IMG/VR virus record: IMGVR_UViG_3300031963_000004
Span: 124,001-188,000 of that record
DNA length: 64,000 nucleotides
Reading direction: 5' to 3' (one strand)
Part shown: positions 20,201 through 44,539 of the stretch, one piece after another
How the letters are laid out: each line of letters opens with the position of its first letter
Numbering within the stretch: position 1 is the first letter of the stretch
Translations under genes and position numbers: made by a program
Notes under the pieces: model-generated
Told to the model about the DNA's origin: nothing
Databases searched by the model: none
The model's input: only the letters and a program-made list of their open reading frames with translations

Positions 20201-23200
20201 TGTCTGGCAAGAAATATTGAGTTTTATAATCCACTCTGTGTTGACCTATCCAGTTTAAGAAATATGTCGTATATAAATTTTTTGTAAATTCATATGTAAA
20301 ATCAGTTTTTCTAAAATAACCGGATAGAACATCATCGTTGGATACAAAAGTGTTTACATTTAACTTAACATTATTATAAACTCTGCATTCAAATTCAAAT
20401 AATACTCTGTCTCTAAAATCTAATAAAGTACCTTCTTTTGATACTTTACCATATATTCTAGTATATGAGCCATCATGACCTTGTATGAAGTATGCAGGGA
20501 AAACGTATGTATCATCGTAAACCACTTTTGGTTCGAATAAAGGATATAAACCTAACTTGGTTGGAGTATTTGGTACGAAGCTACCATAAGTTTGATTATA
20601 CTCTTTTATTGTAATCTTATCACCAGGTTCTAAATCTAATGTAATAATAACTTTTGGTTCGTCTTGGCTAATTGTATAATCACGATTTCTTAATAGCTGC
20701 GTTATTCGTGTCTCACTCTCTGTTTCTTTAGTTAGGTATATCAAAATTCCATCATAGCTTGCTTTACTAAAATCGTAAATCTTGCTTAATGGAAAGAAAC
20801 TTGTATCTATAAATGCGTTGAATGCGTAGGTATTTGCAGCGAAAGGTGCTCTGCTAGGTATCATGTCACTCCAAAAGAATGAAGTGTTTTGATCCTTATA
20901 GCTTGCGATTTGTTGTAGTGCTAAATCTAATAAATCAGATGCACTCTCTCCGCTATATTCTACTGTTTCAATAATACTTGTAATTAATAATTTAAAATTA
21001 ACATATTCATTTGCACTATAAGTTAATGAATCAAATAAATTAAAATTTTTGTTTCTTAGACATGCCGCAGCATAAATTAATGGGGCACTGTTTTGAATAA
21101 TTTTATCACCATACGTGATTAAATTACCCGCATCTCTGTAATTGTTTGATCCAAAAACTTGTCCTGTCAGTTGTTGACTATTAACAAAAATAGTTTGATA
21201 GTGATTTCTTATATCACCTAAACTTAATGACGCTATCGGTGTGTTAAATGGGTTGCTGCTTAAGTTAATAGGGATAGTATAGTATGCCCCCTCACCCAAT
21301 GGTCCCTCACTGTGTATAAGTACCTCAACAGGGGACTCAGTTACAGGAGGATTTAGTAGTGTAACAATTGTTTCTTTATCAGTTTTAGTAACTGTGTACT
21401 GATCACTGGTTAATATATTTTCATTTACACTGACCTTAATGACTGGCCATGGGCTATCGTTCTGATCTATAGCGACTGCATTACATGTAAATGAATTTTG
21501 TCTTAGTATAGGATTATATGTAAAATTATATGCTTGATACTGAAAGCTTTCACCAACTGTTTTTACCCAACCCAATTCTCTCGTAAATTCATATCTATCC
21601 GTATAGCGATGAGGATAACCTATGCTAACTTTTTCTGTTACAGGTCCTGTCATTAAAGAATATTTGAATACATCTTCATTCAATGATATTCTAAAACTGA
21701 TATCTCCAATATTGGCTACTGAACTGTATGCTAATGGAAACCCTAATACTGGGTCATTTTCGCCCACACCAGGTTTAAATTCAAACAACGTGCAACCTAT
21801 AAAATTACTGCCTGGATAAAAATCTTTATCGGCTAAACTTATATTGTTTTTATCAAAAATATCAAATAATGGTGGTTGATTTACATATGTTTTTTGTTGT
21901 GCTTGATTCCAATATCCTTTATCAAAATAAAAACTCTTTCCACTGTTTGCTGTCCCAAAGTTAACATAAACTTGATCTAGGTCTTGTATGTCGCCATCTG
22001 CTGCCTTTGTAAGAACAATGGTTGGTTCTTGTGTTTCGTTTATTGATGCAAAGTTAATAATGAAAATTTTATTTCTTACATTTGGATCACTGTCGTTTGC
22101 AAAAATAACTCTACTACCTTGAATAGCTTTATACTGATTCCCATCAGGATAATATTCTGTTCTGCCAACTACCCCTATAGTTGGATTACTATTCATTACG
22201 TCAGTTGTAGTATTATCGATAAAGTCTACGTAGCCCTTACCAATGGTTCCTGAATCAAATAATTTTAGCTCAGGATAAAATTCTAAGATAGGTCTATTTG
22301 CTCTGTTTTCTCTATTATTAAGTGCGGCTAAAACTACATCACCCGAAGTGTATTCTGCTGTTGCCTTAAGAACATCTATATGAAACCAACGATTGCTGCG
22401 ACTCCATGCATTTTTATTGATTGCGCTACGATTAATTGTAATATAATCTTTTTGTGCTGGCATTGAAGTTCTGCCACCGTATCTTAGTGTATCGAATCCT
22501 TCATTATCATAGATTGTGTAAATTAGTTGCCCAAATGGTTCTACAATATTTAAATCTTCTGCTTTAATTAATTTTATACTTGTCCCTACTCCTTCAACAT
22601 AATAACTACCTGTTTTATATGGAGCTGGAATAATATTACCAACAAATTTAACTTTTAACCCGTTTGTAAATTGTACACCATTAGGACCTGTATAATTTTT
22701 CTTCCCTAATACATCAGTTTCAATATTAATAGCATTGTTAACTTTGGCATCTAGTAATTTAATTGTTCCTACTTTATTAGGTGTGCTTTCATCTTGATAA
22801 TACAGAGTATCTAATGGGGCAGTTATAATAGGTATTTTTGCTATTTCACCTACAGGCAATCTGACAAACTCTTGACTAACGTATTTTCTCCCGTTCGTTG
22901 CTATAATCTTTTCTGCTATAGGAAGTTCACCATCTTCATCTACGCTTATTATAAAATCATTGTCTAGTTGTAAAAATCTAATTTTATAATAATTATTATT
23001 TGGAATAGTTTTTGGAGCATCATCAAACTCTTTTTCTTCTAGTGAATAGAGATCGTACGGAGTCGGTAGTTCAACTGATTGACCTGGTTTGTAATTTAAA
23101 AATATAACTCTTTTTTCACGGATTTGATTAATACCGTCAATTAATCCCTTAGGATACTTAGATAAAACTTCACTTAACTTTTTACCATGTAATTCACTTA

Positions 23201-23993
23201 TCGGTGTATCAGAAATTAAGTCAACATAATTTTCACCAGAAAAAATCCACTCATCCTGATCAGATGCTTGTGGCACAGTGAATTCGATTATACCGGCATT
23301 TGCACCATTATTTTCAACACCATAAATTTCTCTAGATGTTACATTAGGTCTAATAGGATTTTTACCATTTATACCAGGATCAGTCTGTATCCAAAAGTTA
23401 CTATTTTGATTTACTATAAACTTGTATGTGCCGCCACGAACTAATTTTAGTGTAGGATTACTTTGAGGTATTCTTTTAAAATTTTCTCTTACGGCATAAA
23501 CTGATGAATCTGATATGATTGTAAAGTCGGCTTCACTGTTTACTGTTTCTGTTGTGACTGGTACCTGATCAGGACCGTCAGGTAACCAATAATACTGACT
23601 AAAATTTACAACCTTATCTAAGTCTACAAAACTATCCCAACTATAAAATTCATTTCTAAATAATAAAGAATGGTTATCAGTAATACCATTTTGTGTTTTG
23701 ATAGCATCAATTAATCCAGGGTAGCTTATAAAATCTTTTGCTACAGAAGTCTCTGGTTTAGTAAAGACAACTCCGGGTTCTAATTGATAATTCTGTCTTG
23801 TTGAATTAGGTTCTTTAACATATACGGCATTGGGATCAATACCATATTCAAACTTTCTTCCAATATATCCTTCGACACGTTGTGTGTTAGGTGTCTGAAC
23901 CAATTGGTCTAATGTCGCGCCTAAAAATTCTTCATTAGGCTTGGTTCTAAAAATCTCAGGAAGAAAATCTAAAGTTCTTACTTTATTAACCAT
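8253..23993 (-). CDS. Giant (5246 aa) baseplate wedge protein, gp7-like, with beta-propeller and carbohydrate-binding-like modules
   Basis: Follows gp6; N-terminal LDFLPEIFRT; IKPYH motif; FG-GAP-like repeats (FGHALD..LLVGAP, FAVGAP); S.DG..W propeller repeats; W...Y..GD.V...G..Y.A modules. Confidence 0.75.
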   Translation of the reverse strand: MVNKVRTLDFLPEIFRTKPNEEFLGATLDQLVQTPNTQRVEGYIGRKFEYGIDPNAVYVKEPNSTRQNYQLEPGVVFTKPETSVAKDFISYPGLIDAIKTQNGITDNHSLLFRNEFYSWDSFVDLDKVVNFSQYYWLPDGPDQVPVTTETVNSEADFTIISDSSVYAVRENFKRIPQSNPTLKLVRGGTYKFIVNQNSNFWIQTDPGINGKNPIRPNVTSREIYGVENNGANAGIIEFTVPQASDQDEWIFSGENYVDLISDTPISELHGKKLSEVLSKYPKGLIDGINQIREKRVIFLNYKPGQSVELPTPYDLYSLEEKEFDDAPKTIPNNNYYKIRFLQLDNDFIISVDEDGELPIAEKIIATNGRKYVSQEFVRLPVGEIAKIPIITAPLDTLYYQDESTPNKVGTIKLLDAKVNNAINIETDVLGKKNYTGPNGVQFTNGLKVKFVGNIIPAPYKTGSYYVEGVGTSIKLIKAEDLNIVEPFGQLIYTIYDNEGFDTLRYGGRTSMPAQKDYITINRSAINKNAWSRSNRWFHIDVLKATAEYTSGDVVLAALNNRENRANRPILEFYPELKLFDSGTIGKGYVDFIDNTTTDVMNSNPTIGVVGRTEYYPDGNQYKAIQGSRVIFANDSDPNVRNKIFIINFASINETQEPTIVLTKAADGDIQDLDQVYVNFGTANSGKSFYFDKGYWNQAQQKTYVNQPPLFDIFDKNNISLADKDFYPGSNFIGCTLFEFKPGVGENDPVLGFPLAYSSVANIGDISFRISLNEDVFKYSLMTGPVTEKVSIGYPHRYTDRYEFTRELGWVKTVGESFQYQAYNFTYNPILRQNSFTCNAVAIDQNDSPWPVIKVSVNENILTSDQYTVTKTDKETIVTLLNPPVTESPVEVLIHSEGPLGEGAYYTIPINLSSNPFNTPIASLSLGDIRNHYQTIFVNSQQLTGQVFGSNNYRDAGNLITYGDKIIQNSAPLIYAAACLRNKNFNLFDSLTYSANEYVNFKLLITSIIETVEYSGESASDLLDLALQQIASYKDQNTSFFWSDMIPSRAPFAANTYAFNAFIDTSFFPLSKIYDFSKASYDGILIYLTKETESETRITQLLRNRDYTISQDEPKVIITLDLEPGDKITIKEYNQTYGSFVPNTPTKLGLYPLFEPKVVYDDTYVFPAYFIQGHDGSYTRIYGKVSKEGTLLDFRDRVLFEFECRVYNNVKLNVNTFVSNDDVLSGYFRKTDFTYEFTKNLYTTYFLNWIGQHRVDYKTQYFLPDNQFTYNFDQCKFKLDGEGFKQGNWRGIYLHLYDTTTPHKSPWEMLGFVSKPSWWDERYGAAPYTYDNKILWEDLENGVVYNDGDSYTIPTRKRPGLSKIIPVDSRGNLRNPLDFLTIGTDQPTYDRGWNAGDYGPQEFSYCKSSTYPFDLIKILAIARPAKFFALTQNLDAYNKNAEFNQWLINDRSRITTSFVDYGSGKAQHGYINWIVDYVQSFGLNGNATFKELLNNLDVRLVYRMAGFSDKDLLKFYLEKSSAGSKSNSLLIPDGSFALMLYENEPYDRVIYSSVIVQKTNKGFKVYGNSQNKSYFVQYTPNYNGRYKNITVLETTIYVSENFYKNEIIVPYGSEFVSLEALSEFIINYGRYLEDQGMKFTNIEEGIEINWQQMIAELIYWNLTGWEAGSTININPSANGLVIDKENAIVQPLTLFQQNYALNQNLVPIQLKDLVISRKGTEFTLQTLNTGDSVSYFTANMSTIEHGIVFDNYTQFNDTIYNPITGLRQHRILMKGTKTAEWKGTLDTYGFILNQDNIKDWQSNQRYIKGEIVYYKNSYWMAADRIAAEATFNQTKWIKTDYEKIQKGLLPNASNRSLESELYYDTTNTNLESDANLLAFGLIGYRPRDYLNASNLDDISQVNVYKNIISEKGTRLIADAVQNITLTTGKISYDVYENWALKVSEFGGVENENFVEFIFDETKLTGNPAIVGIVDKMIIPNVMQSIPLNSVINYGRPFSENKIAPVIKANYIEKLPSAGYVHFDDVRVTGYSISSLKNNPITANDVNMDDYIWVADEKDDWLVNTAISISEKNSTVKVVEAVNNLDGTITLRFENQHNLVLGNHFILLKFDYRVDGYYEVKNVTTLDTIVIEVTLPNNVLSIVGEGIVAKFQNQRVSTPSSINNLQLINSGFSKAKVWVDEDTDGTWAVYQKNINYIKQDIVKPNSTGTFGSAIAHHSKLGYFVSDAAQGKIYRYQPDDFEKSKYRANEVIDKFLGVTIGAGFGTQIAIAQDTMIVTKPGTNSTIYVYQIKRTRTGNYVEKPAITINSQRVGDSIALSGDANWLYASSHTVSGNFVRTYKKTAAQTYEFVKTYNLGGDLQDFSKITLSTNYNGSKLFIGAPLKNYGTSPNQIVNVGMAAVLNRVIEKIDVKRDYVEDTEVYYNLSVSAPTTDHYLDVFVNGKLIENTKYQITVAGLQFLYDLKAGDVIEISYPDLFKTQEFQLTNLAEIRPGNAFGHALDTNRHGSELLVGAPFFVSENNLEGLVVRYTNYGKKYGIIQATNNYSLASSSKILINGYQVTLPTNLLGAVNAINDANITNVYARVVDNKLVIGLVDPNLGPIEEKLTIQALNSTTLQQIGILEYQESQRISDPENVEGASQFGFSIKFNEYNSFAVGAPTSTRKSLTTFDFTDDLDTTNDTIFDNNYTKFVDELGSAGSVYIYDYLANHNESADKLGKFVYSQAANDTTLDIGANPHYGKVIEFKDYNLIIGCPDYKPGVDNGRIVFYENKQNLRNWHVLRKSNDVIDVNRLQNIQIFNAENNERIESLDYIDPLQGKLLGIVTENIDYISSQDPAGYNSQLTTGNLVWGDAFVGKIWFDTSTTKFLNYHQEDVLYNAQNWGKIFPGSTVTIYTWIESNVLPVNYQGPGTPYNIEYYTSLYNVDNSGALTNKYYYWVRSTNILSSDKTLPDSILEQYITDPQSSGIGYFAALQNNVYGLFNAIDSIKGKSTGLHIGFTDKIKKDDSYNEFKLIKDGNPNDFLPGVPSAYTAFEMPESLYDKLLDSLSGIDERGNLVPDIHLPKLLQQGIKVRPRQSFFSNRLKALENYCKYVNSVLIKHPISEILTPSFIGESNKESVPKGAPGFLTTSGEFFNTPDYWEHVYWWADGYNNNTKPDVEVLKYYDLATLNPFENMLAGVTTNSDGKREVYLYTNGDWVRVGLEQGTIQIKESLWNYEILGLGFGNTFYDTDSFDVFPHTETRYIVRSVTEEIFTNELLIHRNKSLITLFEYIISEATSTNCYLTWLNKTSLVDVTNTLRELKADLNYRSDNQDFLQGYLKEIKPYHVVMKEFAIKYTVNDTYDGQLTDFDLPAQYDFNLGKFITPNLTFFPVTAVGEFGPTDAIWNRSIYFDWLDNYGLSLTGQKSVTIGSLTKYITPVSETIYIDNAYGLPVNGVVKINNEYIGYAGVDRDAGKLTFVSRGLRGSVASDHNPNSKVIIDLPEVVVLNTGRNYIDVPTVIAYIDTTRYPAPLREAVLEPIMADDKVVGVKVVDSGAGYAATPEIIIQASKTFKFNSSVVNFLVNSINIDSVDLNTGDVVRFVHGEGNPIKGLANKKYYHVRVLWKDEVFGAKSIIALYSTAVNAQLDNHRIDLIDTGSSTDNKLELTARAVAVASNTPTREISTKLKFDRTSYVSKVTEWKSGEFYASEFSPSGDESSTSSISASGSTLSSVQHRVFDIQEVTLEEGTNEVAVSIDYTGSSLSPGQLKGLPLYFYVVPPTYMYPQHVKVKDIIIGNQYKILSLGDTNWNFMAGTTGLTYNVGDSIKPVVRGMGTGVVTAFLAPNNLEYDKWYVIAELGDTRWDLIAQTEGIIYQVGNRIWIEDLSPSNFGSTPGKAIEEGHALIKFYRPNFVFNKVYNEYFVEVFNKGTIYNVGDKITVDGVYLGGVSGANDATIKVVYTQANKMELYELSGLAVGAFKQYYVKPINQTQLKVYHDAPMVRPVIASQVWKGNKSYKRGDIVLANGKYYRAIADVEPTTVSARSIVKDKSYYVKTVGLIDWTVIGADTANELAGTEPFTATANGNIFINASAFVYLNEFNPAGYVRLEDNPFPFDNNSYMYLPEPVQLTSGYSRTTSSIVSLNNRLYKCLVSNNDTEFDFDKWQVLDSNKEELNALDRIVGFYQPTTNMPGKNLPLLLTGVDYPNNTYYSNKFDENYTLDTQLKDQPFYPKDIKIRSVLWDNEKYLAVADGRDYSMILLSYDEGITWQIKRISADVLEVSDVIHSGTHYVLTTRKPSNPVFISYDGLSWLGLGSYTPYDKVDFDEPGEAWDSSSLTAPSGGLYNVASHNDFYVAAGDQLVASTDAYAWDSVYSFQSRTEARANYIDYINSEFYAGFIAVGYGLDVIEDPTEEVSAQVTTIGRVLLSENGRAWTPIYPHPTNNGLNTVVGGPEMIVLGGDNGTVLYSTNMQNIFAGTIEGDTITDNILAGCYAANTFVFVGQNGLILVSYDGMSWSKITSGTNQNLNSVTHDGQHFLAVGNNATILRSWEGLVWQNVSAIGGANTFYEVKGDPFTSGYGPEEMVPGAITDQFSMTVITRSGSTWNPEVYQHNGYKVIGNKVSPNGVEIDFSNFSQAPAQLALSIMDPLSNLSKMIHPNVTPTDNNEYTYSVDWIQKKITLNKEIRETEIILVEVYEFGNGNQLVRATSDDIPVTIDESTGHSQIVFNIKYEELLTADPAVYINGEKKTFTNDYVIASTDNGRTKLLFDRVYDTTVNFISFVLFGSTVQNYGYSLPETQVFEFDSTGQTGLALDYQLIENENDYIPRIVRVNGLELPITDYTITIGPVSTLAIIPTLNEGDIISITTFNDTREQYFLQESISTLRVTPLLAVAIDKDVVYLYITTETDEDPGLTTGDLIQIDGISGTNQLNNNTYYMKLETKFSETFTEYDDEGTETSYTKDVYPITLWFNDSLSRPVTSRFLSEYVGGGFVWKYEDTHVIPQTIDISDKTRLNVSVNGIRLGSDGLRLNDGNYLSILADIKPDDVIMITSMVSSATPNEMIYVNEVDKNGDQFIYRANSSNRTWLTENLEPLQDVIHVKDVSKLIDIVEDTYIVVADSDRLLVRIIYDLETIKETEVYNETTLSKLNSSDFTLLTNNSVAYLVFRNGVSEGDQINVVMRLGDTINVNGEKIRYSKVDYQNNTISNLKRGIQGTAINKMHLKYSSVVGITPSNTLFNFYYNRSWNSEIYNDTAGDPLQISDSAPAKFLQQGTK

Positions 23994-27882: not shown

Positions 27883-30687
27883 TTATCCTTTTAACTTATA
27901 AATTTCTGTGTTGATACTGTCTAATTTGTTTAACAGAGTTTTGTAATTTTCTTCCGCATTTTTAGCATCAGTACTATCAGGACCATATTTCTTTCGGGCT
28001 TCTAAGTAAGTTTGGTATGATTGATTCTTTTGCGGCAGATAAGCGTCACGCTCTTGTTGCAATTCTTCTAATCTTGTGATTTGATTATTTGGATCAAGAG
28101 ATGATGTACCCGTAAATGAACTTGCTGATACTGGTACTCCGGATCCTAATAATGTTTTTACCTTTTCATTAATTTCAGTACGGTCGAAAGTATCTACACC
28201 TACAGCAGGCAGTCGGGCATCGTTAAGGTTAGATGTGTTTAAAGAACCAAATAGATTATTTAAATTTTTCTTTTTTTCTGCATCGGCTTCAAAATATGCT
28301 GCTGACTTAAGACTAATCTTTTTGTTCTGCATTAGTGTTTTCATTTTCTCAGGATCTAATACTGGAAAACTAAAGGATGAAAATCTTCTTTCGTTACTAA
28401 AACTGAAGTCAGTAATTTTGTTTGTTGCAAGATTTAAAGGTCCTGTTCCCAACGGGGCGTATGACTTTTTAATTTTTTCAAACAAACTATTACTAGAACC
28501 TCTATTATCATTATTTGTAGAATCGTCATCTGTTGAATCTGATAACTTGCCGGCTGCGCTTAATTTTTTATCTGCTATTATAGCTGCATAGTTACCTGAA
28601 GCATAAGTTTTAACAATAGGATCAAATCGATTATTGTTGCTTGGGTCGTTGACAAATTGAATTGTTTTGTCAGAGCCAAACTTAGCACTAGTTAATGCTA
28701 ATCCTCCCAATTGATCTGAGCTTTCTTTACCTGATATAATACCTTTTCTATATAGGTCTGTCATTCCTTTTGTAATTAAAGTTTGTTCAGCTTTTATTTG
28801 AATCTTTTTATTAGACAAATATTCATTTACAGAATTTATGTTATCTTTTCCTGTGAATAACCTATTAGGCATTGCAGCAGATAATGCACTACCCGAAGAA
28901 ATTAACTTTTCGGCTAATAGTCCACTTCCTGGCTTTAAATAACCTGCTCTTTCTAGTTGAGTTGGTGTGTGCCCAAACTTACCAATAACAGCAAATTTAT
29001 TCCCACTAGAATCTGTTGTAATACCGTTCACTGCTCTCTTATTAAGTTCATCACTTTCGGCGTTTGTTGCTGATTGTGCTATTAGTGTTGCAGTTGTTGT
29101 TTTATCGAAAATAACTGGATTAACTTGTATTTCTTCTGATTCCGGCACCGTGTCCTTTACCGGCGGTTTTACTGGATTAGAACAGCTTGATCCAACCGAA
29201 CCATTGCATGATGATACCTTACCACTACAACCAGATGATTGTTTTGCGCTAGCATTGCAACTACCTTTACAGCAAACACCTTTATTATGATCTGGCCAAG
29301 GTGTATGTGTAGGGCATCGTGTTGTTATACTTTTTAGTTTACCAGGACATGGTGTCCAACCTTTTGTTTTGTCAAACAATGTTTCAGCGTAGCAAGATGG
29401 AACGAAAGGTTTTAATGTAGCTGGTTTAAGTGATGTAGAGCCTGTATTTAAATTTACTTTAGCTCCGTTAACAAATGAGGTAGCTGCGCTAGCCATACTC
29501 GCATCACCTGCACTATCAAAACTCATTTTTTTGTCAACTTTAAGAGTATGGTCTCCTACTGTGTGTTGTTTAAATTCTGTGCCTACTCTAATGCTAGTGT
29601 CTTTGGAACTTTCTACTGTGATTTTTTCTGTAAATAAATTAACTTCTTTACCTGCATGAAAATTAATTTTTCTATCAGCATGAAAATTTAAATCACCTTG
29701 TGTTCTTATGTTAACGCTGTTGGTAGCAAACACATCAACCGTGCCTTCTTTTCCTAATTCAACGTAACTTTGTCCATTGCTATGAATTACGAAGATAGTT
29801 TGACCGTCATCACTCATTGTAATTTGATGACCTGCTGAGGTTCTAACTCTTACTAAATTATTTTTTCCATCAAAATCACCGTCATCCATAACAAGTGAAT
29901 GACCACCTCTACGACCTATAATCTTTAAATCTTCATCATTTGCGTTTGGTATTTTCGCTGCTATTTCTTCATCGGTACCTTCAAATCCGCCCTTATATAA
30001 AGGTCTGCCTGGGGTGCTTATACCAAACACTCTTGAGGGACTCTCACGCATACTTGAGCTTGTGATTACTCCTCTAACTTTATCTTTTATTAAACCTTGT
30101 TCAAATAATTGTGTGGCTACTCTTTTATGCGTTGGTCTAACTGTAGCATACGGATTTCGGCTATTTGCTAAGGCTTTATTGTAGGGCTGCATTTCAACTA
30201 CAGGCAGTACACTAGCACCGCCGTATGCAGTTGATTCATCAGAATCTAATACAACAAAATTCGTTGATCCAACAGCAGGAACCATGTGCGTAAGTCCTGG
30301 CGCCGGAACACATCCTATATAAAATCCAAAGTCTTTTTTACCATTTAAAAATAAACAAACTACTTCTGATTCAACATCAGGTGGTTGCGCCCAAAATCCA
30401 TATGCATGTGGATTCTCTTTATATTTGCCATATTCAGAAGTTTCTTTGTCAATTGTTCCTGTAGTTCCACCAAAGAAAGGAGGTAAGAAACTAACTGGTA
30501 TCCATTGGTCAGCATTGTCAGGATCAAGACCACTAAAAGCTTCAATATAAACACGAATTCTTCCTGTTCTTGCAGCGTCAATGTTGTCTTTAACTATACC
30601 TTTTACAGGATAGGGAATTTCTACTTGTCCACCAGGATTAGGTTTATACGACCCGGTAGTACCTCTTACTTTAGTTACGTCATCCAT
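27883..30687 (-). CDS. gp5: Baseplate central spike, T4 gp5/VgrG-like, with C-terminal extension
   Basis: N-terminal OB-fold (GIVKDNID..RTGRIRVYI...W...PPD....V...F.NG); beta-helix motifs (GHSLVMDD, RTSAGHQITMSDD); PTH.PW..H motif. Confidence 0.8.
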   Translation of the reverse strand: MDDVTKVRGTTGSYKPNPGGQVEIPYPVKGIVKDNIDAARTGRIRVYIEAFSGLDPDNADQWIPVSFLPPFFGGTTGTIDKETSEYGKYKENPHAYGFWAQPPDVESEVVCLFLNGKKDFGFYIGCVPAPGLTHMVPAVGSTNFVVLDSDESTAYGGASVLPVVEMQPYNKALANSRNPYATVRPTHKRVATQLFEQGLIKDKVRGVITSSSMRESPSRVFGISTPGRPLYKGGFEGTDEEIAAKIPNANDEDLKIIGRRGGHSLVMDDGDFDGKNNLVRVRTSAGHQITMSDDGQTIFVIHSNGQSYVELGKEGTVDVFATNSVNIRTQGDLNFHADRKINFHAGKEVNLFTEKITVESSKDTSIRVGTEFKQHTVGDHTLKVDKKMSFDSAGDASMASAATSFVNGAKVNLNTGSTSLKPATLKPFVPSCYAETLFDKTKGWTPCPGKLKSITTRCPTHTPWPDHNKGVCCKGSCNASAKQSSGCSGKVSSCNGSVGSSCSNPVKPPVKDTVPESEEIQVNPVIFDKTTTATLIAQSATNAESDELNKRAVNGITTDSSGNKFAVIGKFGHTPTQLERAGYLKPGSGLLAEKLISSGSALSAAMPNRLFTGKDNINSVNEYLSNKKIQIKAEQTLITKGMTDLYRKGIISGKESSDQLGGLALTSAKFGSDKTIQFVNDPSNNNRFDPIVKTYASGNYAAIIADKKLSAAGKLSDSTDDDSTNNDNRGSSNSLFEKIKKSYAPLGTGPLNLATNKITDFSFSNERRFSSFSFPVLDPEKMKTLMQNKKISLKSAAYFEADAEKKKNLNNLFGSLNTSNLNDARLPAVGVDTFDRTEINEKVKTLLGSGVPVSASSFTGTSSLDPNNQITRLEELQQERDAYLPQKNQSYQTYLEARKKYGPDSTDAKNAEENYKTLLNKLDSINTEIYKLKG

Positions 30688-30698
30688 AGTTTAATACC

Positions 30699-33350
30699 TT
30701 AAAAATAACTTCTGCTCTTAATCCAATCCATGTCCTTAGATGATTGACTATTATCATCATCAATGGCTTGATTGGGTTTTGGGTTTGTGGGACTTCTGAT
30801 GGCACCTACAATGCTAGCATTTGTTCGTTGATTAAATTGATTAGCTGCTATTATACCGGCTGGATCAGGACCTTGTCGTGCAGTTGCTACTTGCGGCATA
30901 CCAGTTGGTTGTTTACCTTGATAAGTTGTTGGGGAGGCTGCTTCAGCAGACGAACGCTGTGCTTCCCCATAACTTACTGATTGTGCGTACCCGCCTGGAT
31001 TAGTTGGTCCTGAATAGTAACTACTACTAGTATTATTAACAGAAGTTTGACTAGCGGTTGTATTACTTGATTTAGTTGCACTTGCACCATTATTCCATGG
31101 TGGGCTCCACAATATTAAATTTAAATCTTGTGTAAATCTGCCTCTACTAAAAGTTGATGTTACATCTACCACCATATAAGAAATTGCACCGTTCAAAACT
31201 TTTTCAAGTTCAGGGGGGTATTTATAAACTTCAATATTTTCACTTGGAGTCATTAATCCAGTATTGTTATCATAATCAATTGCTTCATTAAATTTAATTT
31301 CAATAAACACTTGACCATCATGTGCGTCTACACTATTATCTGGTCCATATCGCTTTGGATACAAATCATATCGCATACCTGAAGTGGCTATTAAGAAATC
31401 TGGATCGCCCAATATTGAAATTTTTGCCGAAGCCTTATCACCGGGGCTATACAAACTAGTTCTAATACTTGCTGCTGCTTGACCTGCTTTACCAAATGCT
31501 CCGGAGTCTGACTCATTCTGTTTGGTCATCATATTAACTTCAACAGGAGGACTTGTATTGGGCGGAGATTGTTGTAAACTGTTCATGTAATACAAGGCAT
31601 TATAACTTTGTTCATAACTTAAAATTTCATTATTAAGACCTGTATAGATATAGTTATACCTTTTATGTGGACCGGGGTAAGAACTTGTTTTGTTAATGAA
31701 TGCTGAACGTAGATATGGTATTTTATAATTATTAATTAAGTAGGTCGTGTCATAGACATGACCCTTTCTTATGTTATCGTATCCGGTACGCTTCACTACC
31801 GGAGTCACAGTAAACCACATAAACTCTTTTTTCTCACCACCGCCTGCACTTTCATCAATGTCTGGTTCTGGATCTTCCTTGTACTGTTTGTTAAGTGCCT
31901 CTCTTACATAACTACTTTGTCCTATTATGGTATCTATAGCTTGTGCTATAGTGGTTCCAGAGTCAATACCAAATGTTCTATTTTTTCTATCGAAACTTGC
32001 AGTGGCTATTTGACTATTTTTATCATTCGATTCACTTGTTTTTTTAATGTTTGTTGATGTATTGGCTTTATAGTTTTTAATTTCATTATCAGTTTCATCA
32101 ACTAATAACGAACTTTTTATTGATCCGTTATCTATAAATTTAATTTGATAAGTGTTTTTTAATTCTGCTGCTTGAATTTTGTTAGTGCCACCTGTAATCA
32201 AATCATCTTCAAATTTGTTCAGTGATGTGATAAGACTATCTGTAGGATGCGTTGATAAAATTTCTTCAACTGTTTTACCACAAAGGGTAAGTTGATTTTT
32301 AATTATTCCCCTTTTAGTTCCGAATCCTGCCTGTACTGACGTATTTTGTGCTTTAATACTATAAGTAGTTGCTTTGCCGTCTAATTTGAATGATATACCT
32401 GTTAGTGTTAGGGGAAAATATCTTGGGAACAAACTGAATTGATCTGTCCCTCCACCTTTAACTGGATTGCCTTCACTGTCATATCCATAAAATTTGATAC
32501 CCAATATATACAATTGTTGCATATGATGGTTTGCCATATTCCCATTTGGAATTTTTTCTTGTGATGATACTCTAAGTGCAGCAGTTTTAAGTTCACTTAA
32601 AAATTTAAATCCATATGGTTCATAGATTTTGAACTCAAATGCTGTACTATCAACAGTTGGGCCGTCAGTTGATTTTGTATTAACAAATGTTTTAAAATTT
32701 AAATCATCAATATAATAATCACGTTCAAATAAAGCCTTACCTCCTGAACCACTGCGGTTAGTTCCGCCCGATTCAGCAACTACATACATACCTTCTAAAG
32801 ATGTTTCACCTGTTTCTATAAAATCATTATAAATTTCACTAGTACACATATACAAACTTAAATTGTAAGTATAGCTTATCATAGTTGATAGTGGGTTGTG
32901 TAGGCGAGGACCTGTTGCTGTTGCAACACTTGATGGCGTAACCGGAGGCTTAAATGCGACATCGTTTCCTGTATTAGATACGACTGCTGATTGTGCATAT
33001 CCACCGGGATTAGTTGGTCCTGAATAATAACTGCTACTTGAATTGTTGGTAGGCACAATAGTGTCTGTGAAATTATTTGCCGATTGTGCATATCCACCGG
33101 GATTAGTTGGTCCTGAATAATAACTTGATGTGCTTATTGTGCTTGTGCCATTAGCGTTTATCTGTCTACCAAAAGCAGCGGCATTTCTATCATCAGGATT
33201 TATAGCGGTTATAGGAGTCGTAGAAGTTGTCGGAGTCGCAGGAGTCGTATTTTGTTTTGTGACGGCAGCCACAAAGTCTGCATTTGTTTTTTGATTAAAT
33301 TGATTTGCAGAAATTACACCGCCTATATTATTCAGTGTTGGGAAAGTCAT
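30699..33350 (-). CDS. Baseplate hub protein (gp27-like) with low-complexity repeat-bearing termini
   Basis: Position between gp53 and gp5; NPL....SYTY..SLY, F.I.EPYG..F, ILGDPDFL and F..G.FTQ.L motifs. Confidence 0.6.
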   Translation of the reverse strand: MTFPTLNNIGGVISANQFNQKTNADFVAAVTKQNTTPATPTTSTTPITAINPDDRNAAAFGRQINANGTSTISTSSYYSGPTNPGGYAQSANNFTDTIVPTNNSSSSYYSGPTNPGGYAQSAVVSNTGNDVAFKPPVTPSSVATATGPRLHNPLSTMISYTYNLSLYMCTSEIYNDFIETGETSLEGMYVVAESGGTNRSGSGGKALFERDYYIDDLNFKTFVNTKSTDGPTVDSTAFEFKIYEPYGFKFLSELKTAALRVSSQEKIPNGNMANHHMQQLYILGIKFYGYDSEGNPVKGGGTDQFSLFPRYFPLTLTGISFKLDGKATTYSIKAQNTSVQAGFGTKRGIIKNQLTLCGKTVEEILSTHPTDSLITSLNKFEDDLITGGTNKIQAAELKNTYQIKFIDNGSIKSSLLVDETDNEIKNYKANTSTNIKKTSESNDKNSQIATASFDRKNRTFGIDSGTTIAQAIDTIIGQSSYVREALNKQYKEDPEPDIDESAGGGEKKEFMWFTVTPVVKRTGYDNIRKGHVYDTTYLINNYKIPYLRSAFINKTSSYPGPHKRYNYIYTGLNNEILSYEQSYNALYYMNSLQQSPPNTSPPVEVNMMTKQNESDSGAFGKAGQAAASIRTSLYSPGDKASAKISILGDPDFLIATSGMRYDLYPKRYGPDNSVDAHDGQVFIEIKFNEAIDYDNNTGLMTPSENIEVYKYPPELEKVLNGAISYMVVDVTSTFSRGRFTQDLNLILWSPPWNNGASATKSSNTTASQTSVNNTSSSYYSGPTNPGGYAQSVSYGEAQRSSAEAASPTTYQGKQPTGMPQVATARQGPDPAGIIAANQFNQRTNASIVGAIRSPTNPKPNQAIDDDNSQSSKDMDWIKSRSYF
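32989..33125. repeat. Two identical 44-nt direct repeats (32989-33032 and 33082-33125) encoding SYYSGPTNPGGYAQS; third copy with synonymous changes at ~30978-31029
   Basis: gattgtgcatatccaccgggattagttggtcctgaataataact read twice directly in the sequence. Confidence 0.9.
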
Positions 33351-33351
33351 A

Positions 33352-33654
33352 TTATAGTCCTAAAATTTCTTTTATTGCAGTTGCTTGTGGCAAGTAAATT
33401 GAGGTGCCTGAAACAAAATCGAATAAAGGATCTTTTAGTTTATTAGGATTTCTAGCAGCAAAGACCCACCATAAATTTGCGTCATCATATAAGTCATATG
33501 CCAATAAATCAGGTCGTAAATTATATGTTACATTTATTGTCCAATTTATATCTTGTGGATTTTTAGGTATATACCTATTTTCCATAATATCTAAAAACTG
33601 TTTATTAACAAGTTTAGTAGTAAAATATGGACTAGTTTGTTTATATGCAGCCAT
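33352..33654 (-). CDS. gp53: Baseplate wedge protein, T4 gp53-like (LysM-like)
   Basis: RPDLLAYDLY....LWWVF..RN....DP.FDF..G..IYLP; start probably ATG 33654 (TAATG coupling). Confidence 0.85.
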   Translation of the reverse strand: MAAYKQTSPYFTTKLVNKQFLDIMENRYIPKNPQDINWTINVTYNLRPDLLAYDLYDDANLWWVFAARNPNKLKDPLFDFVSGTSIYLPQATAIKEILGL

Positions 33655-34934
33655 TACCAAATACCTTTCTTGATTAGATCACCTTTAGCATAATCTTTAA
33701 CAGAGAACTTGTTACTAGAATCATATCTACTAATCATTGGGCTTGCACCTAATTGAATAGTAAGTTTAGTCGGTACGTATGTAGCCTCTTTAGAATGTTC
33801 GTTACGAAACATAGGTCTGTCAGGTTCGGCCCCTGCAGGTATTTGTGCTGATTCTCTGCGAAGTACTTTTGATATGATCGTATTAAAAATTCCCCCTACA
33901 CCGGATCTACCTCCGCCGGCAGCAGATTTAGTTACAGGACTATATGAGCCTAAATTTTGTCCGCCAGTGTTGGCGGGCAAACTTGCTCTTATATAATCAA
34001 CATCATTTGGAAGAGAATAGGTAAAGTTAGTTATCACTAATGGATGTTTAGAAAATTGATATTGTCCGTATCCAGACAAATAGCATAATGGCGGGGGAGT
34101 CCCTTTCATGGGATCCTTATCCATACCATAAAACATTTTTGTCACTGATTTAAAGAAATGAATTACTGCAAGTAAATATCTTGCTTCATTGGTATCTTGT
34201 GCAGTAAATTCTGCTGAAATTTGTATCTCACCTACATTACTGTTTCTATATTGATAAAATTTATAATTTGTATGAGTTAAATCAACAGGATCATAACTTG
34301 CTTGATAACTTAAGTTTATTATAGGAGTATACGGGAATATAACGCCGTTAGTTTGTCTTAAAGGATATAAAACATGACTATCATCTCTTGCATCCATATA
34401 CAAATAATTTGCGTTTGGTGCTAATTGTAACCTTACTCTCCAGTCATTTTCATTGATATTAAATCCTCTAGAGGGTTGAGCAGGAGGCATTGTTGGGTTA
34501 GCGAATATACCTTTTTTAAGTGGTTCCGCACTAAATGTAGTAGGTGCGGCTCCGGTGCTATTTGTAGCTGAAGCTGCATACCCTCCTCCCGATGTAGGTC
34601 CTGAATAATAGCTTGAGCTAGTATTAAAGTTTTCAGGCTTAAAATTAGTCGCAGACTGTGCATATCCACCCATACTAGTTGGTCCCGGAGAATAACTACT
34701 AGTCACTGGTCCTGAATAGCTGATTGGTGAATCTTTAAAATTGCTAGCAGATTGTGCGTAGCCACCAATATTAGTTTGTCCTGAAAAATAACCACTGCCA
34801 CTGTTACCTACTGTTGGTTGTGGACTGTTATTCCTAGTGATAGCAGCTACTACACTTGCGTTGGTATTTTGATTGAATTGATTAGCTGCAATTATACCAG
34901 CTGCGTCCGGAACTGTTGGGGTTGGGAATGCCAT
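33654..34934 (-). CDS. Baseplate tail-tube initiator/cap, gp48/gp54-like, with repeat-bearing N-terminal extension
   Basis: DWRVRL, GVIFPYTP, H.NY....Y.NS, FTAQ...EA.YLLA..HF.KSVTKMFYG and PPP...LSGYG; position beside gp53. Confidence 0.65.
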   Translation of the reverse strand: MAFPTPTVPDAAGIIAANQFNQNTNASVVAAITRNNSPQPTVGNSGSGYFSGQTNIGGYAQSASNFKDSPISYSGPVTSSYSPGPTSMGGYAQSATNFKPENFNTSSSYYSGPTSGGGYAASATNSTGAAPTTFSAEPLKKGIFANPTMPPAQPSRGFNINENDWRVRLQLAPNANYLYMDARDDSHVLYPLRQTNGVIFPYTPIINLSYQASYDPVDLTHTNYKFYQYRNSNVGEIQISAEFTAQDTNEARYLLAVIHFFKSVTKMFYGMDKDPMKGTPPPLCYLSGYGQYQFSKHPLVITNFTYSLPNDVDYIRASLPANTGGQNLGSYSPVTKSAAGGGRSGVGGIFNTIISKVLRRESAQIPAGAEPDRPMFRNEHSKEATYVPTKLTIQLGASPMISRYDSSNKFSVKDYAKGDLIKKGIW

Positions 34935-34951
34935 AATTGTATCCTTTTTGA

Positions 34952-34967
34952 TATTTATCGCTAAATA
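34952..34967. promoter_or_regulatory. Back-to-back late promoters (GATAAATA on -, CTAAATA on +) at the strand switch
   Basis: tatttatc g ctaaata in the divergent intergenic region. Confidence 0.55.
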
Positions 34968-35001
34968 ATATCACTATTTTTACCTTTTCCTAAAAAAATA
35001 C

Positions 35002-42109: not shown

Positions 42110-44539
42110 ATGGCTGATATTCCTGATGACTTAAGAGATACAAGCGAAGATGCTTCCAGAGCGGCTAGGGAAGCTGCCAACGCCCTACGTAGGGCAGTAG
42201 AAGCAGAAGCAGAAAAAAGAGAAAGAATAGAAAGAGCTAAAGCCGGAGTTGAGCAGTTAGCCGGAAGTGCCATATCCTTTTCAAGAACTTTAACTGAAAA
42301 TTCGGGGAGTATGGGAAAATACGGATCTGCTATCGATCAAGCAGCTTCAGGGGTAGGTGATTTAGTAAGCTTGTTAGGACCTTTTGGTATAGTCGCAGGT
42401 TTATTAATAAAAGTTGTAGGTAAACTTGTAGGACAGGTTTTAAAAACAGACGATACTCTTATTCAGGGGTATGACAAATTAGCAGAGATGGGAGGTGCTA
42501 CTGCATTTAGCACCGACGGCTTAAGAGATTTAGCACTTGAAATGAAGTGGACTGTTAGCGACGGTGCATTTACGCAACTAGTAGATGTGGTCGCTGAATT
42601 TGGTAACAACGTAACAGGATTGGGCACAACAGCTGGCGTTGGTATTAAAAACTTCATGAAAATTGTCGAGATGGAACCTGTTGTTAGGGAAGAATTCACA
42701 CGCTTAGGTATAGGACAAAAAAAGGTAGCGCAATTACAAGCTTCATATCTTGCTAATGAAATAAAATTAGGTGGCCGTAGATACAAAGATAATGAAACTT
42801 TAAGAAAAGAATCATTATCTTATATAAGAAATTTAGTTGAGTTAAGTGCCTTAACTGGTGAAAATATTGATGAGATTAAGAAAAGGCAAGAAAACGATTT
42901 AAAAGACATTGGATATAATCTAGCGTTGCAAGAAAGAATGCAACAAAAGAATGGTCAACAACTTAAGTTGAATATTCAAAGAGGTGTTGAACTAGCAGGC
43001 CAAGTTGATGAAGGCTCACGTAAAGCAGTTATGGAAGTTGTTGCTAAGGGATCTGCCGTTGGTCCTGCCGCTGCTGCGCTACAGCAACGATTTAGTATGG
43101 CTGGTTTAGATTTTGTAGAAACAGTGCAATCATTCGAAAAGGGAATGATTAAAGAAGATGAGTTTAGAAGAAGATTTCAACAAGCTAATAAGGCTACATT
43201 TGAAAAATTAGGAAAAGGATTCCAACTAGATGCGCAAGGTTTAAGCAATGTTTATGCGATTTCTGCAAAAACAATGGAATTCCAATCTAAAACGATTGGT
43301 GAAAACACATCGCAGCAAGTAAAAGACGATGTTAAAAATGTCAAAGATAGAAAAGACGAAATAAAAGATGGTCAAGTTGCGATTCAAGATGCAACTACTC
43401 AATTAACCAGAGCGTTTGATGAATTTATAAAATTAATTTCTGGACCTGTACATGCTGCATTCAAAGGATTAATTTATTCATTGCAGGCATTAACTAAAGG
43501 TATAACGAAGTTTGTAAATTTTATTGGCTTAGCTAAAAATTTCGGTGATAAGTCTAAAGTAGATCCTACTATGCCATTTGCGTTTGATTCTATTGAAGAA
43601 TTACTTGATCAACAGATCGAATCAAATAAAGAAATGATTCGAATAGAAAAATTATTTAAAGAAAAAGGAACATCACCTAAATCAAAATTTGAAGATCCAA
43701 ATTCTGTAAAGGCCCTACTTAAGAATCCATCTTTAGTTAAAGAAAGATACAACTATCTTGAAGCAGAAGAAACATACAGGGGAACAACCCAACAATTAGA
43801 AAAACTTTTAGGTACTGAAGGATATAAAAAAGCATTAGAAGAAAGAGAGAAAAATTTAAGAGAAGGTAAAACAAAAGAAGAAGCGGCAAATAAGGAAGCA
43901 GCGAAGAATCAGCAACCAAAAGAATCAGCTACCGCAAATACTGTTGGACCACCTCAAACTCCTACAAGTACAACTACTGCGACGGTAAATACTAACGAAC
44001 AACCAAGAACAAGTACATCTGCTCCTAGCAATGGTCAACAACCAACACAAAAATTTATGCGAGGTGGTATCGCTAGGAATCCAAATCAAGCTAATAGCCT
44101 TGTTTCACATTTAGGTGGAAATGCCAAAATACCTTTACCGAATGGTATTAATTTACCAGCTGATGTTTCTTTATCTGAAGATTTACTATCAAAATTAATG
44201 TCAGCACAACCCGGTGCTAGTAATAACACTGACATTTTTGCATCACTTCAAAATGCTATGCAAAATATGAAAATAGATGCCGTACCTGCTAATTTTGAAA
44301 TGAATAGTAAAAATATATTGAGAGATACGGATAATATGGATAGTATTACAGGTAACTATGCAGAAACACTTAAAAAATCAATTGATAATACTATTAAGAT
44401 GCCCGAAAAATCTCAAATGAAATCTAATAATGTTAATGATATTTTATCTGTTATAGTTGAAAAAATGGATGTTTTAGCTAGTAAGATGAATGAAAACGTA
44501 GATAATCAATATACTACTTTACTAAAGAGTAGAAGATAA
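42110..44539 (+). CDS. Tape-measure-like protein 1
   Basis: Long Ala/Gly/Lys-rich helical protein with a hydrophobic segment (LLGPFGIVAGLLI); paralogous to the next gene; next to the chaperone gene. Confidence 0.6.
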   Translation: MADIPDDLRDTSEDASRAAREAANALRRAVEAEAEKRERIERAKAGVEQLAGSAISFSRTLTENSGSMGKYGSAIDQAASGVGDLVSLLGPFGIVAGLLIKVVGKLVGQVLKTDDTLIQGYDKLAEMGGATAFSTDGLRDLALEMKWTVSDGAFTQLVDVVAEFGNNVTGLGTTAGVGIKNFMKIVEMEPVVREEFTRLGIGQKKVAQLQASYLANEIKLGGRRYKDNETLRKESLSYIRNLVELSALTGENIDEIKKRQENDLKDIGYNLALQERMQQKNGQQLKLNIQRGVELAGQVDEGSRKAVMEVVAKGSAVGPAAAALQQRFSMAGLDFVETVQSFEKGMIKEDEFRRRFQQANKATFEKLGKGFQLDAQGLSNVYAISAKTMEFQSKTIGENTSQQVKDDVKNVKDRKDEIKDGQVAIQDATTQLTRAFDEFIKLISGPVHAAFKGLIYSLQALTKGITKFVNFIGLAKNFGDKSKVDPTMPFAFDSIEELLDQQIESNKEMIRIEKLFKEKGTSPKSKFEDPNSVKALLKNPSLVKERYNYLEAEETYRGTTQQLEKLLGTEGYKKALEEREKNLREGKTKEEAANKEAAKNQQPKESATANTVGPPQTPTSTTTATVNTNEQPRTSTSAPSNGQQPTQKFMRGGIARNPNQANSLVSHLGGNAKIPLPNGINLPADVSLSEDLLSKLMSAQPGASNNTDIFASLQNAMQNMKIDAVPANFEMNSKNILRDTDNMDSITGNYAETLKKSIDNTIKMPEKSQMKSNNVNDILSVIVEKMDVLASKMNENVDNQYTTLLKSRR

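What the first reader, a model, noticed from the sequence alone, without database searches (positions are those of the whole stretch)
30795..34910. Second shared motif G(I/V)I(A/S)ANQFNQxTNAxxVxA(I/V) at the termini of the same two proteins
Seen: the 426-aa N-terminus reads MAFPT...AGIIAANQFNQNTNASVVAAI, the 883-aa N-terminus reads MTFPT...GGVISANQFNQKTNADFVAAV, and the 883-aa C-terminus reads AGIIAANQFNQRTNASIVGAI. Both proteins begin MxFPT. This motif always lies on the terminal side of the YYSGP repeats, giving a leader-plus-cores layout at the N-termini and a mirrored layout at the C-terminus. Inference: a recognition or assembly helix shared between otherwise dissimilar structural proteins, perhaps packing together in the tail lumen or recruiting a modifying enzyme, and spread by intergenic recombination.
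Basis: partly seen in the sequence, partly recalled or inferred. Interest (0 to 1): 0.65.

Follow-up and report, generated by a model that had tools for sequence, protein, structure and literature searches.

The report
Shared docking motif on baseplate tails
Two stacked proteins at the tip of a freshwater jumbo phage's tail tube, the hub and the tube initiator, carry the same short, strongly conserved peptide motif inside otherwise fast-changing floppy tails; it most likely fastens both tails to a common partner, though that partner was not identified.

Summary
A 22-residue motif (core F-x3-T-N-A-x-[IV]-[ILV]-[GAS]-[AT]-I) occurs three times, at 34836-34901, 33258-33323 and 30795-30860 (minus strand). 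It occurs nowhere else in the 223-kb phage record.

The two carriers are not unrelated proteins. By predicted fold, the 426-aa protein is a baseplate tube initiator (T4 gp48 / Afp7 / A-1(L) gp18 class). The 883-aa protein is a gp27-like central hub. They sit in the order initiator, gp53-like, hub, gp5-like spike.

All three copies lie in predicted-disordered, low-complexity terminal extensions. Kin such as RaK2 and XaC1 lack these extensions.

The motif is conserved in many uncultured freshwater relatives, in one to four copies per tail. It evolves under strong purifying selection (pN/pS 0.12) while flanking linkers drift (about 1.0). A profile search of 1.84 billion proteins found it only in these two families.

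I read it as a tethered short linear docking motif of the tube-tip proteins. The partner is unknown: one complex prediction gave no answer. The leader-plus-cores (RiPP-like) reading is not supported. This is a new variant of a known kind, of moderate interest.

The parts
34836..34901 (-). Motif copy 1: residues 12-33 of the 426-aa tube-initiator protein (N-terminal extension)
   Evidence: E 2.6e-15
33258..33323 (-). Motif copy 2: residues 10-31 of the 883-aa hub protein (N-terminal extension)
   Evidence: E 2.0e-14
30795..30860 (-). Motif copy 3: residues 831-852 of the hub protein (C-terminal tail). This is the most deeply conserved copy.
   Evidence: E 5.5e-18; pN/pS 0.12 against L007
30702..30794 (-). 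Conserved end of the hub C-tail after the motif: a Pro-rich stretch, an invariant acidic DDD-x-S block and an aromatic terminus
   Evidence: invariant D125-D127, S129, D134; acidic block in 42 of 97 hub tails
34449..34934 (-). Disordered low-complexity N-terminal extension (residues 1-162) of the tube initiator. It has a conserved head with the motif, a swappable middle cassette and a conserved pre-domain linker.
   Evidence: pLDDT <50; 78% S/T/G/P/N/Q/A/Y
33657..34448 (-). Folded tube-initiator domain (residues 163-426)
   Evidence: Foldseek (A-1(L) baseplate initiators 8kea_P, E 2e-4); VIA (Z 9-10 to P1, PVC, AFP, A-1(L) and T4 5iv5_BE initiator chains, against about 6 for plain tube proteins)
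33352..33660 (-). gp53-like small baseplate wedge protein between the two motif-bearing genes. The likely true start is the ATG at 33654, giving 100 aa as in relatives.
   Evidence: phrog_7145, E 4.5e-23; PF11246, weak; synteny
32913..33350 (-). Disordered N-terminal extension of the hub (residues 1-146)
   Evidence: pLDDT about 30
31089..32912 (-). Folded gp27-like hub core (residues 147-754)
   Evidence: pLDDT 80-94; T4 gp27 1k28_D E 1.9e-8; VgrG 4mtk_A 9e-9; Mu gp44 1wru 2.9e-8; AlgoCIS 7aef_q 1.4e-9
30702..31088 (-). Disordered C-terminal tail of the hub (residues 755-883), a string of short conserved motifs separated by variable linkers
30977..31037 (-). Tyr/Gly/Ser/Pro cassette (YYSGP...GGYAQS type) in the hub C-tail. 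Five further copies lie at 32987-33047, 33080-33140, 34568-34628, 34652-34712 and 34748-34808.
   Evidence: family D1, 6 copies
27883..30687 (-). gp5-like central spike gene directly downstream of the hub (context)
   Evidence: phrog_13211, E 2.4e-40; OB domain PF04717, weak

Best explanation
The element is a short linear motif of about 20 residues with an invariant Thr-Asn and near-invariant Phe, Ala and Ile. [quoted passage not shown] These are the trimeric gp27-like hub (883 aa) and the hexameric tube initiator (426 aa) that stacks on it.

Shown:
- the identity of the two carriers, by predicted fold and gene order;
- predicted disorder of the extensions;
- restriction of the motif to these extensions in these two families;
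- strong purifying selection on the motif while the linkers drift;
- variable copy number (1-4) and cassette shuffling.

Inferred: the motif is a tethered docking peptide. The flexible tails let several copies reach and bind one common site on a partner in the baseplate core or channel, or bind each other. This would tie hub, initiator and that partner together during assembly or hold them until firing. The way it works resembles the terminal tails of the LysM protein gp16 of cyanophage A-1(L), which insert into the hub barrel, the tube initiator and the wedge. The partner and the location (lumen or hub-wedge gap) are not determined.
For: Carriers. The initiator model matches baseplate tube-initiator chains. 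The hub model matches gp27, VgrG and Mu gp44. The gene order gp55-like, initiator, gp53-like, hub, gp5-like, gp25-like, gp6-like is shared with RaK2, XaC1 and 10 metagenomic loci.

Disorder. pLDDT is below 50 over residues 1-160 of the initiator and over 1-146 and 755-883 of the hub. Only short low-confidence helices lie on the motifs.

Conservation. The strict motif is present in all nearest kin. The core is present in lineages with only 43-50% identical domains.

Selection. For the hub C-motif, window against L007, pN/pS is 0.12. It is 1.00 in the adjacent linker and 0.33 in the folded core. Paralogous copies have pS 0.35-0.67 with pN 0.12-0.21.

Specificity.
- No core-motif hit in any other of 607 six-frame ORFs of the window and 11 loci.
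- No fourth copy in the 223-kb record.
- Core present in 26 of 116 initiator N-extensions but in 0 folded domains, and in 15 of 97 hub C-tails but in 0 cores.
- Only 4 significant hits among 1.84e9 representatives, all from these two families.

Lineage-specific variants appear in both proteins of one genome: I-V/I-I in the window clade, I-L/V-L in L008, L009 and L011.

Precedent for docking tails in baseplate cores: PMC10966104 and PMC13433997.
Against: No partner was found. The single complex prediction gave no answer (score 0.19, mark 0.34), which counts neither for nor against. It used the hub C-tail against the initiator domain, the gp53-like protein and the gp25-like protein.

AF2 did not dock the motifs in cis on their own folded domains.

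Copy number varies among relatives (totals of roughly 12-18 per virion if hub = 3 and initiator = 6). This speaks against one fixed stoichiometric site.

RaK2 and XaC1 build the same module without the tails, so the motif is not essential to the basic architecture.

Linkers of about 100 residues are longer than contact between neighbouring rings would need.
Confidence: 0.5

Rival explanations
1. The motif acts after contraction. Hub and initiator ride on the tube tip into the cell envelope. [quoted passage not shown]
For: The motif is confined to exactly the two channel proteins reported to stay on the tube tip (PMC13433997, citing T4 gp27 and the tape measure protein). Hub proteins elsewhere carry envelope-acting accessory domains. 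In other lineages the same N-terminal position holds a LysM domain (P0108, P0132-P0135). Variable copy number fits avidity binding better than a fixed structural site.
Against: The motif is conserved across lineages whose other host-facing parts differ. No membrane-like hydrophobicity is seen. LysM domains in baseplates are usually structural. No host is known and nothing was tested.
Confidence: 0.2
2. The copies bind each other (helical bundle or cross-beta zipper). Together with the Tyr/Gly/Ser-rich low-complexity cassettes they would form a cohesive mesh or plug in or under the channel.
For: Self-association would explain why both proteins must carry the same sequence and why their variants track each other within a genome. 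The tails are 74-78% S/T/G/P/N/Q/A/Y and 6-14% charged. From my own knowledge, not tested here, this composition recalls cohesive low-complexity domains. Tandem copies occur (up to 4 in P0130).
Against: Many motif-bearing tails lack the Tyr/Gly cassettes (L004, L007, L008). Within-genome similarity is equally explained by cassette exchange or a shared partner.
Confidence: 0.12
3. The motif is a recognition (leader-like) sequence that recruits a modifying enzyme acting on the adjacent Tyr-rich repeats.
For: The layout in this genome has the motif terminal to the repeats. Two radical SAM proteins, one with an N-terminal twitch/SPASM-type domain (NF033640, E 5e-99), lie about 31-33 kb away on the same strand.
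Against: Motif and repeats occur independently in relatives. The radical SAM gene is found in IMG/VR contigs whose initiators have different, motif-free extensions. It sits with a carbamoyltransferase and a DxD-like protein, which suggests small-molecule or glycan chemistry. The carriers are large virion proteins, not short precursors.
Confidence: 0.04
4. The motif has no function of its own. It would be a by-product of low-complexity sequence or a remnant of recombination.
For: The surrounding sequence is low-complexity and recombinogenic.
Against: pN/pS is 0.12 against 1.0 in flanks. There are invariant residues across 28 copies from distant lineages. Synonymous sites are saturated between copies that keep the peptide.
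Confidence: 0.03

Closest known systems
Terminal docking tails of the LysM baseplate protein gp16 of cyanophage A-1(L) (PMC10966104), and the C-terminal 'handle' of tube initiators in phage 812, pyocin R2, E217 and Pam3 (PMC13433997)
   Same: These are short terminal peptides of baseplate-core proteins that reach over and insert into the hub, tube initiator or wedge, bridging threefold and sixfold parts. The protein neighbourhood is the same: hub, initiator and a small LysM-type protein.
   Different: Here the tails are on the hub and the initiator themselves. They are about 130-160 residues long and disordered, and carry one shared sequence motif in 1-4 copies. Binding to any partner has not been shown.
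T4 gp27 hub and gp48/gp54 tube initiators; the syntenic RaK2 ORF079/ORF081 and XaC1 gp317/gp319
   Same: Same folds and same gene order next to gp53-like and gp5-like genes. PHROG families phrog_11190 and phrog_12050 match.
   Different: The RaK2 and XaC1 proteins start and end at the folded domains (243-292 aa and 711-777 aa). They have neither the extensions nor the motif.
Short linear motifs in disordered regions (general concept)
   Same: A short conserved island in rapidly evolving disordered sequence, with variable copy number and position and modular gain and loss.
   Different: To my knowledge, and in the papers I searched, this is not a described motif class. Pfam has no model for it.
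RiPP leader-core precursors with radical SAM/SPASM maturases
   Same: There is a superficial layout of one recognition-like segment followed by repeated Tyr-containing units, and a radical SAM gene in the same genome.
   Different: The carriers are large structural proteins. Motif and repeats are separable. The enzyme is neither adjacent nor co-distributed.

Membership tests
Baseplate tube initiator (T4 gp48/gp54, Afp7/Pvc7, A-1(L) gp18) - the 426-aa protein | Tube-type beta-barrel domain, closer to initiator chains than to plain tube proteins | tested here: met
   Foldseek E 2e-4 to 8kea_P/R, prob 1.00. VIA Z 8.9-10.1 to P1, PVC, AFP, A-1(L) and T4 5iv5_BE chains, against about 6 for tube or Hcp proteins.
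Baseplate tube initiator - the 426-aa protein | Gene in the baseplate-core cluster beside hub and spike | tested here: met
   Order initiator, gp53-like, hub, gp5-like, gp25-like, gp6-like. The same order is seen in 10 related loci.
Baseplate tube initiator - the 426-aa protein | Forms a hexameric ring between hub and first tube ring | not testable with these tools
   Needs cryo-EM or an oligomer model. No coordinates or oligomer job were available.
gp27-like central hub - the 883-aa protein | gp27/VgrG-type multi-domain hub fold | tested here: met
   Foldseek prob 1.00 to 1k28_D (1.9e-8), 4mtk_A, 1wru and 7aef_q over about 570-625 columns. Core pLDDT is 80-94.
gp27-like central hub - the 883-aa protein | Encoded directly upstream of a gp5-like spike with an OB domain | tested here: met
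   The ORF at 27883-30687 matches phrog_13211 (E 2.4e-40) and PF04717 weakly.
gp27-like central hub - the 883-aa protein | Sequence-level membership in a curated hub family | tested here: not met
   No Pfam family at E<=0.1. No PDB sequence match with either a single sequence or a profile. Assignment rests on fold and synteny.
Short linear docking motif | Lies in disordered sequence and is more conserved than its flanks | tested here: met
   pLDDT <50. pN/pS 0.12 against 1.00 in the flank. Never found inside folded domains.
Short linear docking motif | Binds a defined partner surface | tested here: inconclusive
   One complex job against three candidate partners scored 0.19, under the mark of 0.34: no verdict.
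RiPP-like leader with repeated cores | Leader always accompanies the core repeats | tested here: not met
   L004 and L007 initiators have the motif without repeats. P0025 has five repeats without the motif.
RiPP-like leader with repeated cores | Co-occurring dedicated maturase | tested here: not met
   The radical SAM gene (NF033640) is about 31 kb away and is also present in contigs with motif-free initiators.

The most novel reading that the evidence does not exclude
The long, nearly uncharged Tyr/Gly/Ser/Asn-rich tails of hub and initiator would form a cohesive, multivalent mesh. This would be a gel-like plug or 'velcro' at the mouth of the tail channel, nucleated or anchored by the shared motif. 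It would gate DNA or tape-measure exit, or glue the tube tip to the host envelope. That would be a phase-separation-like or nucleoporin-like principle inside a virion.
Probability: 0.08. Interest if true: 0.8.

Novelty: new variant of a known kind. Interest (0 to 1): 0.45.

Why it matters
Baseplate cores are usually described as rigid assemblies of folded domains. Here a large, environmentally abundant group of T4-superfamily freshwater phages has long disordered tails on the two proteins that form the tube tip. More than 6,400 initiator homologues were found, and this phage's 4.2-kb stretch occurs nearly unchanged in runs from 17 freshwater or lake studies. Those tails hold a peptide that is better conserved than the folded hub core. 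If it is a docking motif, it marks an unrecognised contact in baseplate assembly or in the first steps of envelope penetration. It also gives a simple handle for finding the partner: a 20-mer peptide, with point mutants at the invariant Phe, Thr and Asn.

Tried and rejected
1. Near-identity DNA search against cultured phages: no match. Protein-level kin are RaK2/XaC1-type jumbo phages, and only over the folded domain.
2. Pfam on both proteins: no family.
3. PDB sequence searches with single sequences and profiles: nothing, apart from a low-complexity hit to TBP that I discard.
4. Complex prediction with the hub C-tail (822-883) against the initiator domain, the gp53-like protein and the gp25-like protein: score 0.19 and 0.15, under the mark. 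This is no verdict and is not evidence either way (earlier attempts did not complete).
5. ESM Atlas look-alikes of the N-extension: scores <=0.82 and TM <=0.35, so no lead.
6. Link to the radical SAM gene: rejected as specific to the motif, because the enzyme occurs with motif-free initiators. Contigs are fragments, so a looser link is not excluded.
7. A T4-type late promoter TATAAATA as an explanation of the upstream sequence: only a one-mismatch version precedes the initiator gene. The exact octamer is rare in the window, 3 against 11.9 expected. Not pursued.
8. Lumen or outside location: could not be decided. No model coordinates were available, and the papers read do not settle where N-termini of initiator barrels point.
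9. Read laying was not used. No alternative genetic code was needed.
Full report
**Observation.** The two ORFs are as described: 33654-34934(-) encodes 426 aa and 30699-33350(-) encodes 883 aa.
- A six-frame scan finds the hexapeptide ANQFNQ three times only. The sites are residues 17-22 of the 426-aa protein and residues 15-20 and 836-841 of the 883-aa protein. MxFPT occurs only at their two starts.
- The full motif spans about 22 residues: 34836-34901, 33258-33323 and 30795-30860.
- At DNA level the copies are 70-77% identical over 77 nt.
- The window is bases 124001-188000 of a 223,151-bp virus record (CheckV 63% complete). A profile of 28 motif copies finds only these three sites in it.

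**What the carriers are.** The region is a T4-superfamily baseplate module.
- On the minus strand the order is: 426-aa protein, a 100-aa gp53-like wedge protein (phrog_7145, E 4.5e-23), 883-aa protein, gp5-like spike (phrog_13211, E 2.4e-40), gp25-like, gp6-like, then a 5,246-aa ORF.
- Divergently transcribed are genes syntenic with the annotated gp55, gp47 and gp46 of RaK2 and XaC1.
- An AF2 model of the 426-aa protein folds only from residue 163 onward.
  - That domain matches baseplate tube-initiator chains. Foldseek gives E 2e-4 to the cyanophage A-1(L) initiators.
  - VIA gives Z 8.9-10.1 to P1, PVC, AFP, A-1(L) and T4 5iv5_BE, against about 6 for ordinary tube or Hcp proteins.
- The 883-aa model has a confident core at 147-754. 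It matches T4 gp27, Mu gp44, VgrG and eCIS hubs with E 1e-9 to 1e-7.
- So the motif sits on the hub and on the ring that stacks on it. These are neighbours in the central channel, not unrelated proteins.

**Where the motif sits.** All three copies lie in extensions predicted as disordered: pLDDT is about 30-50 over initiator 1-160 and hub 1-146 and 755-883. Only short low-confidence helices overlap the motifs. The extensions are 74-78% S/T/G/P/N/Q/A/Y and 6-14% charged, against about 52% and about 20% in the folded parts. RaK2 and XaC1 homologues (243-292 aa and 711-777 aa) lack the extensions altogether.

**Relatives.** The initiator family is very large, with more than 6,400 hits. It has a nearly invariant folded domain and hypervariable N-extensions of 6-441 residues, which include coiled coils, LysM domains and low-complexity sequence.
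- The nearest kin (56-75% identity) all keep the strict motif, often twice.
- Their hubs keep the C-terminal copy. The N-terminal copy is present in some (one to three copies in P0127, P0129 and P0130) and absent in others (P0128, P0131).
- A looser core recurs in lineages with only 43-50% identical domains, in both proteins. T and N are invariant across 28 aligned copies; F, A and I are nearly so.
- The hub C-tail aligns as a chain of conserved islands separated by variable linkers. These are a degenerate first motif copy, a YQGK-G-[MF]-P island, the motif, a Pro-rich stretch, an invariant DDD-x-S block and an aromatic end.

**Selection.** Between window and L007 the hub C-motif has pS 0.73 and pN 0.09 (ratio 0.12). 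The adjoining linker gives 1.00 and the folded core 0.33. Between the paralogous copies in the window, pS is 0.35-0.67 and pN is 0.12-0.21. The copies are therefore old and the peptide is maintained.

**Specificity.**
- The core pattern hits no other ORF among 607 six-frame ORFs of the window and 11 related loci.
- It occurs in 26 of 116 initiator N-extensions, 15 of 97 hub C-tails and 4 of 97 hub N-extensions. It never occurs in a folded domain.
- A profile search of 1.84 billion representative proteins returned four significant hits: three initiator N-extensions and one hub. A 35-position profile needs about 41 bits there, so distant copies in other families would be missed.

**Shuffling.** The window's initiator extension has three parts: a conserved head with the motif, a middle cassette of three Tyr/Gly units, and a conserved pre-domain linker. 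In L004 the middle cassette is replaced by a second motif copy. Another relative, P0025, has five Tyr/Gly units and no motif. The hub N-extension differs less at synonymous sites from L004 (pS 0.22-0.29) than the hub core does (0.52), as expected after exchange. So the motif and the Tyr/Gly cassette are separate, mobile modules.

**Mechanism.** I commit to a tethered docking motif, with the partner inferred rather than shown.
- The precedent is the baseplate core itself. In A-1(L) the tails of the LysM protein insert into the hub barrel, the initiator and the wedge (PMC10966104). Initiator 'handles' run along the hub in phage 812 and others (PMC13433997).
- Lineage-specific motif variants appear in both proteins of the same genome. 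This fits a shared partner, mutual binding or cassette exchange.
- One complex prediction against three plausible neighbours gave no verdict.
- The main rival is a role after contraction. Hub and initiator are the parts reported to stay on the tube tip in the envelope. Variable copy number also suits avidity better than a fixed site.
- A self-associating mesh and an enzyme-recognition role are less likely.
- The only candidate enzyme is an N-terminal-twitch radical SAM protein at the window's left edge (NF033640, E 5e-99). It also occurs in contigs whose initiators carry unrelated extensions.

**Novelty and verdict.** Docking tails in baseplates are known, and so are the two protein families. 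A shared, selected motif on long disordered tails of hub and initiator has not been described in the sources I could search. I file it as a new variant of a known kind and rate interest as moderate. The phage is from freshwater: the 4.2-kb stretch is held nearly unchanged in runs from 17 studies dated 2017-2025. Several of those runs may be the source sample.

Noticed in passing
window 1-1173 (-), continuing left to G000:C1:123842; L018:4835-13173: A 443-aa radical SAM protein with an N-terminal twitch/SPASM-type domain (NF033640, E 5e-99). On the same strand it is followed by a second radical SAM protein (313 aa), a 271-aa unknown, a carbamoyltransferase (496 aa) and a 1,222-aa unknown. It is preceded by a 310-aa DxD-like protein (window 1173-2105). 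Homologues are rare in cultured phages (3 records) but occur in 34 IMG/VR loci.
   Followed up: partly
L018:508-3678 (G000:C1:112508-115678), left of the window: Host-like phosphate-uptake genes in the phage record: a PstS-type phosphate-binding protein (PF12849, E 1.6e-36) and a phosphate-selective porin O/P (PF07396, E 1.7e-54), followed by a glutamine-amidotransferase-like protein.
   Followed up: no
window 8253-23993 (-): A single 5,246-aa ORF directly downstream of the gp6-like wedge gene. Relatives have 4,275- and 5,509-aa counterparts. It is presumably a giant baseplate or fibre protein.
   Followed up: no
window 42110-44539 (+) and 44543-47305 (+): Two adjacent, mutually similar, largely helical tape-measure-like proteins (809 and 920 aa). 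The second has an M15 peptidase domain at residues 697-759 (PF13539, E 4e-11).
   Followed up: partly
window 30702-30794 (-) and hub homologues: The hub C-tail ends in a widely conserved acidic DDD-x-S block plus an aromatic or GR-type terminus, found in 42 of 97 hub homologues. Many of these lack the TNA motif, so this is a second, older tail motif.
   Followed up: partly
P0108; P0132-P0135; L008:10613-13246: In other lineages a LysM domain occupies the N-terminal extension of the initiator or the hub, although a separate gp53-like gene is also present.
   Followed up: no
window 34935-34975 and the whole window: The initiator gene is preceded by GATAAATAT about 20 nt before its ATG. Homologues read TATAAATA there. 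The exact octamer TATAAATA is under-represented in the window (3 against 11.9 expected).
   Followed up: partly
window 27883-30687 (-): The gp5-like spike has no detectable lysozyme domain. It carries a Cys-rich stretch in the middle and a coiled-coil-like C-terminus.
   Followed up: no
L058, L059 (IMG/VR contigs G003, G005): More distant initiator homologues (30-40% identity) also have N-extensions of about 170 residues, but of a different Gly/Ser/Ala/Leu-rich type. A long floppy N-extension therefore seems a general feature of this initiator family.
   Followed up: no
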